Origin: Paragordius varius
Taxonomy: Eukaryota; Animalia; Nematomorpha
Assembly (NCBI GenBank): GCA_964247055.1
Contig: OZ176058.1
Location: 2,480,001-2,544,000, forward strand
Direction of reading: 5' to 3'
Length of the DNA stretch: 64,000 bases
Position numbers and translations under genes: made by a program. Shown here in pieces: positions 1 to 53,100 of the stretch (its first letter is position 1; each line of letters begins with the position of its first letter). Under the pieces are notes generated by a model. The model ran no database searches. It was not told where the DNA came from and saw only the letters and a program-made list of their open reading frames with translations.

Positions 1-722
1 AATTTTTTTTAAAAATAATTTTTTTATAAAATAATTTTTAATATTAATATATTTTTTTCCAAATCTCTCTATATAAGTTTTATACTATAAAAATTTAGTT
101 TAGTTATATTTTAATTAATAAATAGAAAATAGAAAATTTTATGTAGATATATTATATTTTTATTTTATTTTTTTTTTGTTATTAAAAAAAATATCAAAAT
201 TAAAATAAATTAATATATTTATTAAAATAAATAATATTTCTTTATTTATTCATTATAATTTTTTAATAAATAAGGTATTGCCAATTAATTTAAAAAATAT
301 TAAATTATATAAATTTCCAACTATTGTATTATTATTATTATTTTTAAAATAAACTATTATATCATTGTTTTTAATGAAAATAATTTTAATTTAATAATTT
401 ATTAAAATTTTTATTTATTAATAATTTAGTTTATTCTATAAACTGATAAATTTAATTATTATATTATATAAAAAAAATTTATTTAATTTTAATTATAATC
501 TTAATTATATAAATATTATAATAGATTCTTATATAAAATAATTATACAATAGTTTTATATATATATATATATATATATTAATTTTTTACTATCAAATTTT
601 AAATTAGTTTAGTGCTATTTTCTTGAAAAAATAATTTAATTTTAAATTTAATAATTATATTTATTAGATTTTATTTTAAGTTAAATAATTTTTATAATTT
701 TTTTTATATGAATCTAATTTAG

Positions 723-8488
<7,766 letters not shown>

Positions 8489-15743: not shown

Positions 15744-16136
15744 TTATTCATCCTCTTTGGTTTGAATAGAATCCATTAATTGGGTAATATTTTTTTCTAA
15801 ATCATCAATTTTAGATCCCATTTCATCTAGTGCACATTGAAATTAAAGTTAAGGAATACTCCTGCAAAGTTATTTAATATATATTTTATATTGTATATAA
15901 AAAGGATATTTTTTGACGATATATCAGTGTAAGATTCTTCAAATTTGTCCTGCATATTTTCTAGCAATGACTGAACCTAAAATATAAACAAATCTACTAA
16001 CAAAATTGGTTAAATCCTGCGCCGTTTCAATTTTATCCAAATCTATCAGCCCATTAGTTTCCGATTGCTTTTCAACAGTATTTTTCTTTTCACATGTGGA
16101 ATCCTCAACAGACGTTTTCTTTAAATCGCCTTCCAT
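15744..16136 (-). CDS. HSBP1: Heat shock factor binding protein 1 (95 aa), 3 coding exons
   Basis: Exons 16136-16002, 15976-15910, 15829-15744. Spliced product MEGDLKK...IETAQDLTNF|VQSLLENMQDKFEESYTDISSK|IDEMGSKIDDLEKNITQLMDSIQTKEDE* matches the HSBP1 pattern (QDLT.FVQ.LL..MQDKF.....I...ID.M..RIDDLEKNI..LM). Intron 1 is 25 nt GT-AG; intron 2 is 80 nt AT-AC. A probable 5'UTR acceptor lies at 16238-16240. Confidence 0.93.
15830..15909 (-). other. U12-type (minor spliceosome) AT-AC intron
   Basis: 5' end ATATCCTTT (15909-15901), branch site TTCCTTAAC (15856-15848), 3' end CAC. Removal restores the HSBP1 frame (K|I-D-E-M). Confidence 0.92.
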
Positions 16137-26127: not shown

Positions 26128-29100
26128 TTGGCGCGGTAATGAACCTGGCAAAAATTTCTCTGGAAAGTTTTGATGAAAAGGAAAATTTTGATCGATACGT
26201 TTCGTACATTCAGCCAATGTTAGCTGCAAAAAACATGACGGCAAACGATAACAATTGCAAGACGTTATTCCTCGCCTACGCAGGAATGTCGGTCACAAAG
26301 AAATTCGAACAATTCCTGTTCCCAAATTCACTGGATAATACCTCCTGGCCGTACATCATTGAAGCCGGCAGGAAAATCTACGAATCGAATAGGACAAACA
26401 TATTCCAGGCCAGATTCAATTTCGTAAAACTCCGTCGGAAATAAAATGAAACATTTACGGAATTTCTGTTACGAGTCAAAACCGAAGCCGCAAAATGCAA
26501 CTTCAAGCTCGACATCGATGAAAAAATGCGCGACGTGTTCATTGCAGGCCTGGGAGTGGAAAAATTAGAACTAGATCTATTCACTAGATTCCCCGATGCA
26601 ATGTGGGGAAACGAAGCTGTAACGCTCAAACAAGTGGTAGACATTGCTCTCAACTATGAAAAAGCACATCAACTAACAACAATAGATGGCCAGATATTGC
26701 ACAGTTCGGAAATACCAAAACATGTGTCGATTCTGCGGGTTAGGTCATGCACCCGGCAGATGCCCAGCTTGGGGCAAACAATGTTATAAGTGCCAAGGCT
26801 GGAATCACTTCCAACCGTGCTGTAAGAAGAAAAGGATTAGCAACGTTCAGCATGTCAAATCTGGAGCCACCGCCAAGATAGCAATAATAATAAATAGCAA
26901 ACAAACACACATGATTATAGACACAGGTTCAAGCGTATCTACAATCGATTGTCAAGCGTGGGAAAAAATTGGGAAGCCCGAGTTGCAACAAACAGGCACA
27001 GATTTGTATAGCTATGGTGGACAAAGAATCAATTCCAAGGGTAGTAGTATGGTCATGGTACAATGCGAGGGTGAAACAAAATCTCTGGCGTGTATGGTTG
27101 TAAGCGGCAAGAAGGCCCCAGCAGTTCTTGGTTGGAATTGGCAACAAGAATTCCCGAATGCCATAAAACAGTGATAAATTGTTGTAAATGTTTTAATATT
27201 AATACATTTGAGGCAAATTCACTTATTAATAAATTTAATTCACTTTTTTGTGAAAAGTTAGGGTGTTTCACGAGAACCACTATTAAATTTTTTTTAAAAA
27301 ACAATACAAAACCAAAAATTTTTAAGTGTCGCCGCATCCCGATACCGTTAAAAGAAAAAGTCGACTCTGAAAAAGAGAGACTTTTAGAAGCGGACATAAT
27401 CAAACCATTAGACCCTACGACTGAGAAATTAACCAGGGCCACCCCTATTGTTTGTATAACAAAAGCGAATGGTTCTCTAAGGTTATGTGCAGATTATCGT
27501 GTTACAATAAATCCACATCTAGTAGATGACAGTCACAATATACCGACATTTGACGAATTAGTTTCCAAAATAGGATTGGGAGAATCATTTTCGGTAATCG
27601 ATTTGAAAGACGCATATCCGCAATTGCCAATAGATCAAGAAAGTCAAAAGTTATTAACAATTACCACACCCCTAGGGTATTTTACATATAAAAGGCTTAC
27701 CTTTGGCCTAACAAGCGCCCCCTGCATTTTTCAAAGATTAATGGATAAGATTTTAGGTGACTGCCCAGGAACAGCTGTATATTTAGACGATATTTTAATA
27801 ACAGGAAAAAACCAAAACGAACATAAAAGAAACTTAGAAAAGGTATTTAAGCGTTTAGACGATTCGGGTTTAAAATAAAGTAAAAGCAAACTAAAACTTT
27901 TTCAACCGTCTGTATTTGGGATATGTAATATCAAAAAACGGCATATCACCAGCTGCCGATAAAGTGGAAGTCATACAAAACTTCCCAAGACCCACGGACA
28001 AAACAACACTCAAGTCCTTTTTAGGCTTAATAAATTTTCACACACGATTCCTCCCGAAATTGCATGGAAGTTTGGCTATACTTCACGACCTAAGCAGTTA
28101 TAAAAAATCCTGGATATGGACCAAAAACTACGAGGACTGTTTTAACAGAGCCAAAAAATTAATATGTCATACTGTTAAACTAACTCCGTTCAACCCTGAG
28201 TTACCTATAATAATCGAAACAGACGCCTCAAAAGGGTACGGAGCAGTGTTACTACAGACCATGCAAGAGGGCATAAATAAACCCATTGCCTACGCATCTT
28301 GAAAGTGGTCCAAACCCGAAGAAAATTATTCAGTGATAGAAAAGGAATTACAAGCCATACTTTTCGCTTTTGAAAAGTTTAGAACGTTCATTACGGGGAA
28401 GAAGTTTGAACTGCGTACTGATCACAAACCACTAATAAAGCTGTTTGGAAATAATCGTAAATTAGACCAAATAAATAATTCTCAAGCTACTACGTTGGAT
28501 ATATAAAGCGAGCGAATTTAATTACAATCTACGGTACATTAAAAGTCACGAAAACATTGCAGATTCAATGCCGACAGAACCACATCAACAAGACACAGAA
28601 AGCTTTCAAACAGCAGAACATGTAAGATAAGTCAATAGTAATCTATTCAATATAAATCGTGACCACATTAGAAGCCAGACCGAAACCGACCCTGTATTAA
28701 AACAGGTAATAAGGGCACTAAGAACAAACAACTGGTCCAATAAAATATTATATCCATTCCACAATTTTAGAAATGAAATTGAAAATACATACGGGTTATT
28801 ATATTGGCATGATAGATTAATAATTCCCGAATCTCAAAAAATAAATATCTTACAATTATTACACGTCGACACCCCGGATTCAAAGCAATGTACGAACAAG
28901 CAAAACAAATAGTCTTTTAGCACAATATGGAAAGCGACATAAAAAAGTGGGTAGATACGTGTAAAAAGTGTCAAGAAAACCGTCTGAGGCGAAAACTGAA
29001 TCCCACATACAATTGGAACACAAATACAGCAATATGGGATAGATTACATCTAGATATAGCAGGCCCGATAGACAATTATTATTGTATAGTTCTTATTGAC

Positions 29101-29938
29101 AGTTATTCTGGATGGGTCGAAGTTAAACTATCGAAAATGATATTGACCAAAAATATCTTAAATTTCCTAGACGAATGTTTCAGTCGATACCAAGAATGAT
29201 AGTAACCGACAACGCGTCTTACTTTACATCTGAGGTTTTTAAAAAAGTCATGAAAACGGGAAACATTAAACATGTAACATCAGTTCCCTATCATCCAAAA
29301 ACTAACGGAATGGTGGAACGAGTAATATATACCCTAAAAACCCATTATCGGTCAGCAGAAGACGATGACCTACATTCCAAAATAAATAACACGCTTTGGG
29401 GATACCGCACTAACATACACAGTGCTACAAATACATGTCCCGCTCAACTTTTCCTAAAACGTACCCTACCCAATCCAATCACATGGCTACAATATAAACA
29501 AACAGACTTCTTAGACGATGTACAACCTAATCACGAATACCATGAAAACGAAAAAGTATACAGAAAAAATGAACTATCGAATGGTTGGCGAGAAAGAATT
29601 GTAAATAAACGACTCGTATTACTCTCATATGAATACAAGATGATAACAAAATCATCCGAAAACACGCAGACCAACTGAGACCAAGGGAAGGAGGCGAAAG
29701 AATAATGGGTAAGACAATTATCCGAAGAAACTCCACCATCGCATGACCTATATGTTAGGTACCCTACTGCCACGACCGAAGACCCGACCTTACCTCCGCC
29801 TCAACCCTCGGAACCCATCATTAAATTGCCATCCCAAACACCCACTATAGCACCTACCACTGACACTCATACAGAACGGCGATACCCTACACGAGTCCGA
29901 CACCCACCAGATAGATATCAAGGACAGGGAAAGAGTGA

Positions 29939-49149: not shown

Positions 49150-52100
49150 AACATAATTATTAAAAAGAATTACATGGAAAACTTTTTTACTTCAAAATAG
49201 CTCTAAAATTTTTTAAAAAAGAGCGTTTAAAAAAAGTACCAAATTTTATATTGTTAATTAATAGTCCTAATATTTTATAAACGAATTTCTAAATTCCAAG
49301 AATCGGTAAAAATCCTTAAATTTTAAATAGCTCTAAATTTTTTAATTTCTAAAAAGTAGTAAAATTACAAAAAACCGGTAGGATTATTAAAAATTTTTTA
49401 TAAATGCATAAATTGATTATCATTAACAAAGGCCAATTACCTAAAGTTCTTTAAAAAAGCGCAAGTATTCTCTTTAGAAACTGCTAAAATTTTGTGAAAA
49501 TCATCTGAAGAGGCTAAAATTTCTAAAATTACTTAGAATTCTATAAAAATTTTTTATTTTTTTTAAATGTAAAAAGCGCTTGAAATTTTTTAAAAATGTC
49601 TATTTTTTTAAATTTTAAACAAACGATGAAATTATTTAAAAACTACTGAATACTCTAGAAAACGCTGAAATCTCATAAAAGCTAAAGTTGCCTAAAAATG
49701 GCTATTTCTTACTTAAATTTTAAAATTTCTTAAAAACCGTTAAAATTTTGAAAACCGATAAATTGTTTATAAATTGATGAAATTCTACAAAAAAAGTCGA
49801 AAATTGTTTAAAAACCTTTAAAATTCTAACCGCTAAAACCATCTAAAAGCGTTAAAATTCTGTTAAAAACCAAAATTTACTAACCTACAAAATTTTATAA
49901 AAAGAGACAAAATTGTTTTAAAAAACCTTTAAAAATATCTAAAAACCACTAAAACTCAATTGGCTAATTTTTATTAAAATTCGAAAAACGCTAATTACAA
50001 AAAATCATAAGATTCTTTAATACACCAAAAATTCTAAAAATCATACTTTAAACAACCTAAAAACCACAAAATTTTTCAAAAAACCTCTAATATATAAACG
50101 CTAAAACCCTAAAAGATGCTGAATTTTTTTAAAAAGCGTAAATATTCCTTTTTAATAAAAAAATGTGTTGAAATTCTTTAAAAATTGCTATCTTCTAAAA
50201 ACCGCTAAAACTCTCAATCCAAAACCCTCTAAAAAGGGTAAATATTTTTTTAATAAATGCGCTTGAAATTCTTAAAAAATTGCAAAAATTCTTCAAAAAT
50301 TGCTGAAACTATCAAAAACTGCTAAAATTCTTTAAAAAGCGTAAATATTCTTTTGAATAAAAGTATGGGCTAAAACTCTTAAAAAACCGCCGACATTGTT
50401 CTGAAACCGACAAAATTGTTTAAAAAGGGCTAAAGTTGTAAAAAACCTCTTAAATTATCTAAAAAATCGTAACTATACTTTTTAAATATAATATGGCTGA
50501 AATTATCTAAAAACCGATAATACTCTCTAAAAAGCGCCAAAATTCTTTAAAAAAGCGCAAAAAATTTTTTTTAATGAAAATATGGGCTAAAACTTTCCAA
50601 AAAACGCTAAAATTTTTTTAAAAAGCTCTAAAACTCTCTAAAAACCGCTAAAACTCTCTAAAAACCGCTAAAATTCTCTAAAAACCACTAAAACTCTCAA
50701 AAAAGCGCCAAAATTCTTTAAAAAAGCGCAAAAATTTTTTTTAATGAAAATATGGGCTAAAACTTTCCAAAAAACGCTAAAATTTTTTTAAAAAGCTCTA
50801 AAACTCTCTAAAAACCGCTAAAACTCTCTAAAAACCGCTAAAACTCTCTAAAAACCGCTAAAATTCTCTAAAAACCACTAAAACTCTCAAAAAAGCGCCA
50901 AAATTCTTTAAAAAAGCGCAAAATTTTTTTTAATGAAAATATGGGCTAAAACTTTCCAAAAAACGCTAAAATTTTTTTAAAAAGCTCTAAAACTCTCTAA
51001 AAACCGCTAACTCTTTCTAAAAAGCGTAAATATCCTTTTAAAATAATAATATGTAAAATTTTTTTAAAAAGCGCTAAAACTCCCTAAAAAGCGCTAAAAC
51101 TCTTTAAAAAACGCTAAAACTCTATAAAAAACTCTAAAACTCCTCAAAACCGTTAAAACTCTTTTAAAACCGCTAAAACTCTTTAAAAAGCTCTAAAACT
51201 CTCTCAAAACCGCTAAAACTCTCTTAAAACCGCTAAACTCTCTCAAAACCGCTAAAACTCTCTAAAAACTGCTAAAACTCTCTAAAAACTGCTAAAACTC
51301 TCTAAAAAACGCTAAAACTCTCTAAAAAACGCTAAAACTCTCTAAAAAATGCTAAAACTTTCTAAAAAACGCTAAAACTCTTTAAAAAAGCGTAAATATC
51401 CTTTTTAATTAAAAATATGGGCTAAAACTTTCCAAAAAACGCTAAATTTTTTTTAAAAAGCTCTAAAACTCTCTAAAAACCTCTAACTAAAACTCTCTAA
51501 AAAAACGCTAAAATTCTCTTAAAACCGCTAAAACTCTCTCAAAACCGCTAAAACTCTCTCAAAACCGCTAAAACTCTCTCAAAACCGCTAAAACTCTCTC
51601 AAAACCGCTAAAACTCTCTCAAAACCGCTAAAACTCTCTATAAACCGCTAAAACTCTCTAAAAACCGCTAAAACTCTCTAAAAACCGCTAAATCTCTTAA
51701 AAAACCGCTAAATCTCTTAAAAAAGTCTAAATTATCTTTTTGAATAAAAATATGAGCTAAAACTTTAAAACTCTCTCATAACCGCTAAAACTCTTTCATA
51801 ACCGCTAAAACTCTCTCAAAACCGCTAAAACTCTCTTTAAACCGCTAAAACTTTCTTTAAACCGCTAAAACTCTCTCAAAACCGCTAAAACTCTCTTAAA
51901 AGCGCTAAAACTCTCTAAAAAAGCGTAAATATCCTTTTTAAATAAAAATATGGGCTAAAACTTTCCAAAAAACGCTAAAACCTTTTAAAAAAGCTTTAAA
52001 ACTCTCTAAAAACCGCTAATTCTCTTAAAAATGCATAAATATCCTTTTTAAATAAAAATATGTAAAATTTTTTTAAAAAGCGCTAAAACTGTCTAAAAAG

Positions 52101-53100
52101 CTCTAAAACTATTTTAAAACCGCTAAAACTCTCTCAAAACCGCTAAAACTCTCTAAAAAAAACTCTCTAAAAAGCTCTAAAACTCTCTCAAAACCGCTAA
52201 AACTCTCTTAAAAGCTTTAATATTCTCTTAAAACCGCAAAACTCTTTTAAAAGCTTTAAAACTCTCTCAAAACCGCTGAAATTCTCTCAAAACCGCTAAA
52301 ACTCTCTAAAAACCGCTAAAACTCTCTAAAAACCGCTAAAACTTTCTAAAAAGCTCTAAAACTCTCTAAAAACTGCTAAAACTCTCTAAAAATTGCTAAA
52401 ACTCTCTAAAAACTGCTAAATCTCTCTAAAAACTGTAAAACTTTCTAAAAAACGCTAAAACTCTTTAAAAAAGCGTAAATATCCTTTTTAATTAAAAATA
52501 TGGGCTAAAACTTTCCAAAAAACGCTATTAAATAAAAATATGAGCTAAAACTTTCCAAAAAACGCTAAAACTTTTTTAAAAAGCTCTAAAACTCTCTCAT
52601 AACCGCTAAGACTCTCTAAAAACCTCTGAAGAAACCGCTAAAATTCTCTAAAATACGCTAAAACTCTTTTAAAAGCTTTAAAACTCTCTAAAAACCGCTA
52701 AAACTCTCTAAAAACCGCTAAAACTCTCTAAAAACCGCTAAAATTCTCTAAAAATCACTAAAACTCTCAAAAAAGCGCCAAAATTCTTTAAAAAAGCGCA
52801 AAATTTTTTTTTAATGAAAATATGGGCTCAAACTTTCCAAAAAACGCTAAAAATTTTTTAAAAAGCTCTAAAACTTTCTAAAAACCTCTAAAACTCTCTA
52901 AAAAAACGCTAAAACTCTCTCAAAACCGCTAAAACCCTCTAAAAAGCGCCAAAATTCTAAACAAACCGCAAAAATTCTAAACAAACCGCAAAACTGTCTA
53001 AAAACGCCAAATTGTCTAAAACTTAAAATTTAAAAAAGCGAGCGTAAATATACTTTTTAACAGAAAATATGCGCTAAAAAATTAAAATGGCTATTTTTAA
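49150..53100. repeat. Intronic satellite, ~20-21-bp unit AAAACCGCTAAAACTCTCT(A/C), with ~170-190-bp higher-order units
   Basis: Homogeneous core at about 50600-52950; spacer block GCGTAAATATCCTTTT...AATATGGGCTAAAACTTTCC recurs; degenerate flanks continue to 54500 and again at 56100-57200. Confidence 0.95.

What the first reader, a model, noticed from the sequence alone, without database searches (positions are those of the whole stretch)
15830..15909. Textbook AT-AC U12-type intron in an intact HSBP1 gene
Seen: the intron starts ATATCCTTT, has TTCCTTAAC about 18 nt from the end and finishes CAC. Only this splice joins ...DISSK to IDEMGSKIDDLEKNI in frame. Established: these are the minor-spliceosome (U11/U12) consensus signals, and the minor spliceosome has been lost repeatedly in fast-evolving lineages. 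Inference: this divergent AT-rich animal retains a functional minor spliceosome. Standard GT-AG gene finders would miss or mangle this gene.
Basis: partly seen in the sequence, partly recalled or inferred. Interest (0 to 1): 0.78.

Follow-up and report, generated by a model that had tools for sequence, protein, structure and literature searches.

The report
Conserved minor-spliceosome intron in HSBP1
This is a real-looking 80-base intron of the rare "minor spliceosome" (U12, AT-AC) type in this AT-rich animal's only HSBP1 gene, but human, mouse and many other eukaryotes carry the same intron at the same codon, so it is an ordinary inherited feature.

Summary
On the minus strand, 15909-15830 is an 80-nt intron. 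It starts ATATCCTTT, has TTCCTTAAC 18 nt before its end, and finishes CAC. It lies in a three-exon, single-copy HSBP1 gene. No GT-AG or GC-AG join is in frame. Only this AT-AC join keeps the protein collinear with the Pfam HSBP1 profile and with human HSBP1 (PDB 3ci9).

The minor spliceosome appears to be retained:
- U6atac and U11 score above Rfam's cut-offs.
- U4atac scores just below its cut-off.
- A divergent U12 candidate has a near-perfect 5' end.
- There is an intact SNRNP25 (U11/U12-25K) gene.

It is not new. HSBP1 and HSBP1L1 are catalogued minor-intron genes in human and mouse, with the same A|ATATCCTTT donor (PMC6717393 supplements). An intron-blind scan of metagenome contigs found 36 distinct HSBP1 loci with an AC-ending, TCCTTAAC-bearing intron at exactly this phase-1 site, in both plant-like and animal-like sequences. 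This scan had already noted other U12 introns in the same genome (SUDS3, SRSF10, BRMS1, PHB2).

The only oddity is the long branch-site-to-3'-end distance: 18 nt, against 8-12 nt in the 36 orthologues. No RNA evidence was available. Interest is low.

The parts
16002..16136 (-). HSBP1 exon 1, coding part (ATG at 16136; ends ...AQDLTNF)
   Evidence: Sequence and ORF list. The N-terminal 45 aa have no significant Pfam match. DLTNF lines up with the DLT..F/V motif that precedes VQ.LL in environmental HSBP1 loci.
15977..16001 (-). Intron 1: 25-nt GT-AG micro-intron (GTTAGT...TTTTAG), phase 0
Evidence: Removing it joins DLTNF to VQSLL in frame.
15910..15976 (-). HSBP1 exon 2 (VQSLLENMQDKFEESYTDISSK plus the first base of an Ile codon)
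   Evidence: Pfam HSBP1 profile positions 7-27, E 9e-4. Aligns to human HSBP1 chain 3ci9_A from residue 11.
15830..15909 (-). Intron 2: 80-nt AT-AC U12-type intron, phase 1
   Evidence: Same site and donor as the catalogued human and mouse HSBP1 minor intron and as 36 environmental HSBP1 loci.
15901..15909 (-). U12-type 5' splice site ATATCCTTT, preceded by exonic A
   Evidence: It is 9 of 9 to the consensus. It is complementary to the AAAGG in the 5' end of the genome's U11 candidate (AAAAAGGGCUU). The pairing itself is inferred from the established U11 model.
15848..15856 (-). U12-type branch-point sequence TTCCTTAAC
   Evidence: It is complementary, with one bulged A, to GUAAGGAA in the U12 candidate. 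The pairing is inferred from the established U12 model. The motif ends 18 nt before the intron end.
15830..15832 (-). 3' splice site CAC
   Evidence: It is the only acceptor that restores the HSBP1 frame with the U12 donor.
15744..15829 (-). HSBP1 exon 3, coding part (last two bases of the Ile codon, DEMGSKIDDLEKNITQLMDSIQTKEDE, stop TAA at 15746-15744)
   Evidence: Pfam HSBP1 31.2 bits, profile positions 30-49. Aligns to 3ci9_A residues 34-47. It is the only PF06825 match in the 110.6-Mb genome.

Best explanation
The stretch 15909-15830 (minus strand) is a genuine U12-dependent, AT-AC intron in phase 1 within the Ile codon that precedes D-E-M-G. It sits in the single-copy, intact HSBP1 (heat shock factor binding protein 1) gene.

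Inferred mechanism, from the established minor-spliceosome model:
- The U11 5' end pairs with ATATCCTTT.
- U12 pairs with TTCCTTAAC and bulges the branch adenosine.
- U4atac/U6atac.U5 then joins, and U6atac replaces U11 at the donor.
- The lariat forms and the exons are joined at CAC|TA.

The intron is the orthologue of the catalogued human and mouse HSBP1 and HSBP1L1 minor intron. It is shared with plant-like and animal-like HSBP1 genes, so it was inherited from a very early eukaryotic ancestor and not gained here.

Shown here: the sequence signals, the reading frame, collinearity with the family, orthology of position, and the presence of minor snRNA genes and SNRNP25. Inferred: that the RNA is actually spliced at these sites by the minor spliceosome.
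For: (1) The signals are a perfect donor and a perfect branch site. The pair occurs once in the window and in 0 of 100 shuffles.

(2) The frame allows 0 GT-AG and 0 GC-AG in-frame joins. Only one of the 13 AT-AC joins has a U12 donor, and it yields 22+1+27 residues.

(3) The product is collinear with the family. Exon 2 covers Pfam profile positions 7-27 and exon 3 covers 30-49, leaving exactly K and the split Ile for positions 28-29. Exon 2 aligns from residue 11 of human 3ci9_A and exon 3 from residue 34, which is gap-free.

(4) The gene is single copy.

(5) The position is orthologous to a known minor intron. Olthof et al. 2019 (PMC6717393, supplementary files 2 and 3) list HSBP1 and HSBP1L1 as minor-intron genes in human and mouse. 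Their donors are GAA|ATATCCTTT and GGA|ATATCCTTT, and their branch sites are TCTTTAAC or TCCTTGAC.

(6) An intron-blind coding pattern pulled 98 distinct HSBP1-like loci from metagenome contigs. Of these, 36 have an AC-ending intron at exactly this site with a TCCTTAAC-like motif (0-2 mismatches). All 10 recoverable donors are ATATCCTT.

(7) The machinery is present: U6atac 66.3 bits, U11 62.7 bits, U4atac 50.7 bits and a U12 candidate at 34 bits. A 157-aa ORF matches PF18036 at 82 bits and human U11/U12-25K from minor-spliceosome structures (8r7n_B) at E 7.7e-15 over residues 12-130 of 132.
Against: No transcript evidence was available, so splice-site use is inferred.

The branch motif ends 18 nt from the 3' end. 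In all 36 orthologous environmental introns it ends 8-12 nt from the end. From my own knowledge, the experimentally favoured branch-to-3'ss distance for U12 introns is about 11-13 nt, so 3' site choice could be inefficient.

U12 (34 bits) and U4atac (50.7 bits) are below Rfam's gathering score of 53.

The PDCD7 and CCDC84 Pfam models found nothing. These searches had no positive control, so they are uninformative.

Genome-wide, the strict motif pair is only mildly enriched: 26 matches against 15 in the reversed-pattern control. U12 introns are therefore few here, and the motif pair alone proves little.
Confidence: 0.9

Rival explanations
1. The intron is real but is removed by the major (U2-type) spliceosome, as a rare U2-type AT-AC intron.
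For: An earlier scan note (s1-373567) describes an AT-AC intron in this genome that has lost its U12 marks. The long 18-nt branch-to-end distance is more U2-like.
Against: The donor and branch site match the U12 consensus 9 of 9 each. U2-type AT-AC introns lack both motifs (established knowledge). The genome keeps minor snRNA genes and SNRNP25. There is no polypyrimidine tract with a U2-like branch and AG.
Confidence: 0.04
2. The minor spliceosome uses a nearer, cryptic 3' site about 10-13 nt after the branch site for much of the transcript. That would give a frameshifted, truncated product, and CAC at 15830 would be only a minor site.
For: All 36 orthologous introns have the motif 8-12 nt from the 3' end, whereas here it is 18 nt. 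A CAA lies 11 nt after the motif.
Against: Any such join hits a stop within a few codons and loses the conserved IDDLEKNI helix (logic). The gene is single copy with an intact, conserved exon 3, which argues that the productive join is used. At least one other candidate U12 intron in this genome (L131) also seems to have a distance of about 17 nt (tentative).
Confidence: 0.04
3. It is a chance motif pair in a decaying or unexpressed HSBP1 pseudogene.
For: Each motif alone occurs at chance frequency in this AT-rich DNA. About 15 motif pairs per genome are expected by chance. No expression data are available.
Against: The motifs sit exactly at the exon ends, in the right order and phase, at the site where human, mouse and 36 other loci have the same intron. 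All three exons are open. Exon 3 alone passes Pfam's cut-off. No other HSBP1 copy exists.
Confidence: 0.02

Closest known systems
Human and mouse HSBP1 minor (U12-type, AT-AC) intron, catalogued in MIDB (Olthof et al. 2019, PMC6717393)
   Same: Same gene family. Same position (between the R/K codon and the Ile codon before D-D/E-M) and same phase 1. Same A|ATATCCTTT donor, and AT-AC subtype.
   Different: It is 80 nt here, against 558 nt (human) and 610 nt (mouse). The branch site is a perfect TTCCTTAAC here, against TCTTTAAC-type motifs in human and mouse. The branch motif ends 18 nt from the 3' end here.
HSBP1 AT-AC introns in environmental eukaryote contigs (for example L033 animal-like, L008 and L016 plant-like)
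   Same: Identical site and phase, AC terminus, TCCTTAAC-like branch site, and ATATCCTT donor wherever the donor could be recovered.
   Different: Their branch motif ends 8-12 nt from the intron end. Their lengths are 215-1754 nt where measurable. The window's intron is shorter and its branch site lies farther upstream.
Other U12 introns noted in the same genome (SRSF10/12 at 61 nt, SUDS3 at 62 nt, BRMS1, PHB2)
   Same: Same genome and same class of short AT-AC intron with textbook signals at ancestral positions. This rests on earlier notes. Matching motif loci L127 and L130 were seen.
   Different: They lie in different genes. In L127 and L130 the branch motif ends 8 and 11 nt from the inferred 3' end.

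Membership tests
U12-type (minor spliceosome) intron | 5' splice site matching [A/G]TATCCTT at the intron start | tested here: met
   ATATCCTTT at 15909-15901, 9 of 9
U12-type (minor spliceosome) intron | Branch-point sequence TCCTTAAC close to the 3' end, without need of a polypyrimidine tract | tested here: met
   TTCCTTAAC at 15856-15848. The distance to the 3' end is 18 nt, longer than the 8-12 nt seen in 36 orthologues, but from my own knowledge it is still within the range reported for U12 introns.
U12-type (minor spliceosome) intron | AT-AC (or GT-AG) termini that restore the reading frame | tested here: met
   AT...AC. It is the only join with a U12 donor, it is in frame, and it is collinear with Pfam HSBP1 and 3ci9.
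U12-type (minor spliceosome) intron | Orthologous position to an accepted U12 intron in other species | tested here: met
   Human and mouse HSBP1 and HSBP1L1 are listed as minor-intron genes with the same donor context. 36 environmental loci have the intron at the same site.
U12-type (minor spliceosome) intron | The genome encodes the minor-specific snRNAs U11, U12, U4atac and U6atac | tested here: met
   U6atac at 66.3 bits and U11 at 62.7 bits are over Rfam's cut-offs. U4atac at 50.7 bits and the U12 candidate at 34 bits are below the cut-off of 53 but are full-length matches. The U12 5' 30 nt are near-consensus, and the 25-nt seed is unique in the genome with 0 control hits.
U12-type (minor spliceosome) intron | The genome encodes minor-spliceosome-specific proteins | tested here: met
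   SNRNP25 (U11/U12-25K): PF18036 at 82 bits and 8r7n_B at E 7.7e-15. PDCD7 and CCDC84 were not detected, but those searches were uninformative. RNPC3, ZCRB1, SNRNP35 and SNRNP48 were not searched.
U12-type (minor spliceosome) intron | Removal from RNA at these sites, dependent on the minor spliceosome | not testable with these tools
HSBP1 (Pfam PF06825) | Match to the family profile above the curated cut-off | tested here: met
   Exon 3 alone scores 31.2 bits against a cut-off of 28.6. Exon 2 adds 19.4 bits on the adjoining profile positions. The genome search gives 29.7 bits. The joined protein was not scored.

The most novel reading that the evidence does not exclude
In this micro-intron, very AT-rich genome the minor spliceosome may work with remodelled parts and looser geometry.

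- The U11 candidate is 248 nt with two large insertions.
- The U4atac candidate is 104 nt and lacks about 29 nt before the Sm site.
- The U12 candidate is divergent.
- At least some U12 introns have a branch site 17-18 nt from the 3' end, instead of the 8-12 nt seen in orthologues.

If transcripts confirm this, the genome would be a natural test of how far U12 3'-site selection can stretch.
Probability: 0.2. Interest if true: 0.35.

Novelty: already known. Interest (0 to 1): 0.15.

Why it matters
It matters little beyond annotation.

The gene is this genome's only HSBP1, and it can be annotated correctly only if AT-AC/U12 introns are allowed. Together with the snRNA and SNRNP25 loci, it documents that this lineage keeps the minor spliceosome alongside 25-nt micro-introns. 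Earlier scan notes suggest the organism is a horsehair worm; that was not tested here.

Retention is the ancestral state, and the HSBP1 minor intron is already catalogued in mammals. The result therefore fills in a species and does not change any picture.

Tried and rejected
Searches that led nowhere:
- The word-based protein search with exon 2 plus its read-through ORF (49 aa) found no candidates.
- The SNRNP25 ORF found nothing in the word search. It was identified through Pfam and PDB instead.
- The Rfam U12 genome search found nothing, because only 42 of 10263 first-look candidates were scored. A 25-nt pattern found the candidate.
- The PDCD7 and CCDC84 family searches were blank, with no positive control, and are treated as uninformative.
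- Full-text searches pairing HSBP1 with the U12-type, U12, minor intron or minor spliceosome terms listed no paper containing HSBP1. The link was found only in supplementary tables.
- A search for a shared promoter element upstream of the four snRNA genes gave nothing at the three-gene k-mer threshold. By eye, only U6atac and U4atac share a CCTATTT-containing stretch.

Full report
**What is there.** The gene lies on the minus strand.
- The ATG at 16136 opens exon 1, which ends ...AQDLTNF at 16002.
- A 25-nt GT-AG micro-intron (16001-15977, GTTAGT...TTTTAG) follows.
- Exon 2 (15976-15910) reads VQSLLENMQDKFEESYTDISSK plus one base.
- The reported interval, 15909-15830, comes next.
- Exon 3 (15829-15744) supplies two bases and then DEMGSKIDDLEKNITQLMDSIQTKEDE plus stop.

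The interval is 80 nt and 21% G+C. It begins ATATCCTTT. TTCCTTAAC lies at 15856-15848, with exactly 18 nt after it, and the interval ends CAC.

**Is it more than chance?** Each motif alone is at chance frequency in this AT-rich DNA. RTATCCTT occurs 8 times against 6.5 expected, and TTCCTTAAC occurs twice against 1.0 expected. The ordered pair within 20-50 nt occurs once, and in none of 100 shuffles.

Genome-wide (110.6 Mb), a looser pair occurs 26 times against 15 for the reversed control. U12 introns are evidently few here, and the motif pair by itself is weak evidence.

The strength lies in the fit to the gene. I enumerated all 2884 in-frame, stop-free joins between exon 2 and exon 3. There are 0 GT-AG, 0 GC-AG and 13 AT-AC joins. 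Only 15909/15830 has a U12 donor, and only it gives 22+1+27 residues (the first run was).

**The gene is HSBP1 and the join is collinear.** The exons were searched apart, by reference. The joined protein was not sent to any tool.
- Exon 3 alone passes Pfam's HSBP1 cut-off (31.2 bits against 28.6, profile positions 30-49).
- Exon 2 matches profile positions 7-27 (19.4 bits).
- That leaves exactly two profile positions for the terminal Lys and the split Ile.
- Against human HSBP1 (PDB 3ci9_A), exon 2 aligns from residue 11 and exon 3 from residue 34, again without a gap.
- The family model finds only this one locus in the genome, so this is the organism's only HSBP1.

**Is the machinery present?** Rfam models run on the whole assembly, and then on the fetched loci, gave four candidates.
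- U6atac scores 66.3 bits (cut-off 33). It has the AAGGAGAGA box, and by eye a TATA-like box about 30 nt upstream and a terminal T-run.
- U11 scores 62.7 bits (cut-off 39). Its 5' end is AAAAAGGGCUU, which is complementary to the donor. The candidate is 248 nt long and carries two large insertions.
- U4atac scores 50.7 bits, just below its cut-off of 53. It is only 104 nt long.
- U12 was missed by the model search, which scored only 42 of 10263 candidates. A 25-nt seed pattern found a single locus, with no control hit. Its first 30 nt are near-consensus, including GUAAGGAA, the branch-site-pairing box. The whole-model score is 34 bits, below the cut-off of 53.

A 157-aa ORF at L006 matches Pfam PF18036 at 82 bits. 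It also matches human U11/U12-25K from minor-spliceosome cryo-EM entries (8r7n_B) at E 7.7e-15 over nearly the full length.

PDCD7 and CCDC84 models gave nothing, but those searches had no positive control.

**Comparison with what is known.** Full-text searches pairing HSBP1 with the U12-type, U12, minor intron or minor spliceosome terms listed no paper containing HSBP1. The supplementary tables of Olthof et al. 2019 (PMC6717393) do list both HSBP1 and HSBP1L1 as minor-intron genes in human and mouse.
- The HSBP1 intron is at chr16:83808747-83809304 in human (558 nt) and is 610 nt in mouse.
- The donors are GAA|ATATCCTTT and GGA|ATATCCTTT.
- The branch sites are TCTTTAAC, or TCCTTGAC/GCCTTAAC in HSBP1L1.

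The three exonic bases fit an Arg codon plus the first A of an Ile codon. That is the same phase-1 site as Lys plus A here. This last step rests on the 3ci9 alignment plus inference.

**How widely is the site conserved?** I scanned metagenome contigs with a degenerate coding pattern for D-[DE]-M-x3-I-D-D-L-E-K. The pattern starts two bases inside exon 3, so it is blind to the intron.
- 120 loci came back, 98 of them distinct and HSBP1-like.
- 52 have continuous coding sequence at the site. These are either intron-less genes or assembled transcripts; I cannot tell which.
- 36 have an intron ending in AC exactly at this site.
- In every one of the 36, a TCCTTAAC-like motif (0-2 mismatches) ends 8-12 nt before the intron end.
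- In all 10 cases where the upstream exon lay on the contig, the donor is ATATCCTT.
- The 36 include plant-like C-termini (L008, L016) and animal-like ones (L033), so the intron is very old.
- A few loci show change at the same site: GTAAGA...CAG of 39 nt (L078), ATATCCTTT...CAG of 47 nt (L007), and ATATCCTTA...CAA of 48 nt (L018).

**Earlier notes of this scan.** Other agents had already reported U12 AT-AC introns in this same genome, in SUDS3, SRSF10/12, BRMS1 and PHB2. They guessed that the organism is a horsehair worm. I did not test the identity. Two of my genome-wide motif hits (L127, 61 nt, flanked by RGFAYV and DAEDAE; L130, 62 nt) fit the SRSF10 and SUDS3 notes.

**What is unusual.** Only the geometry is unusual. 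The branch motif ends 18 nt before the 3' end, outside the 8-12 nt range of all 36 orthologues. It is also longer than in L127 (8 nt) and L130 (11 nt). One further candidate (L131) may be about 17 nt (tentative, no gene model).

From my own knowledge, the optimum for U12 introns is about 11-13 nt, with function up to roughly 20. The intron is therefore plausible, but it may be inefficient or prone to cryptic 3' sites. Every nearer acceptor breaks the frame.

**Verdict.** This is the well-known, deeply conserved HSBP1 minor intron, in a genome where this scan has already seen several other U12 introns. Splicing itself remains inferred for lack of RNA data. Novelty: already known. Interest: low.

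Noticed in passing
window 50586-53005: A satellite of about 118 copies of a 20-bp unit (GCTAAAACTCTCTAAAAACC), with a 99-bp higher-order period. It explains the strong negative GC skew at 50-54 kb and the cluster of chance ATATCCTT matches there.
   Followed up: partly
window 26686-29678 (+): Broken remains of an LTR-type retroelement. Separate ORFs match aspartyl protease, reverse transcriptase (RVT_1, 82 bits) and integrase core. I observed this only.
   Followed up: partly
L003:1501-1748 (G000:C5:11395495-11395742): The U11 snRNA candidate is 248 nt against a 134-position model. It has two large insertions, in stem-loop I and in the next helix, while the 5' end and the Sm site are conserved.
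   Followed up: no
L002:1501-1604 and L004:1377-1527(-): The U4atac candidate is only 104 nt: 9 nt stand where the model has 38 before the Sm site. The U12 candidate is divergent outside its first 30 nt (34 bits). Both fall below Rfam's gathering score.
   Followed up: partly
L078, L007, L018 (metagenome contigs): Other eukaryotes' HSBP1 genes carry different introns at the same phase-1 site: GTAAGA...CAG (39 nt), ATATCCTTT...CAG (47 nt) and ATATCCTTA...CAA (48 nt). These look like examples of subtype switching or U12-to-U2 conversion of this intron.
   Followed up: partly
L001 and L002, 48-68 nt upstream of the snRNA starts: U6atac and U4atac share a CC(A)CCTATTT-like stretch about 50-65 nt upstream. 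U6atac also has a TATA-like box near -30 and ends in a T-run. These may be a proximal sequence element and a Pol III layout.
   Followed up: no
window 1-6000: The G+C content is extremely low, 12-16%, against 25-35% over most of the window.
   Followed up: no
L128, L131, L132, L133 (G000 C1, C3, C4): These are further ATATCCTT...TCCTTAAC pairs in this genome whose first downstream AC lies 15-23 nt after the branch motif. If they are real introns, long branch-to-3'-end distances may be common here. No gene models were made.
   Followed up: partly
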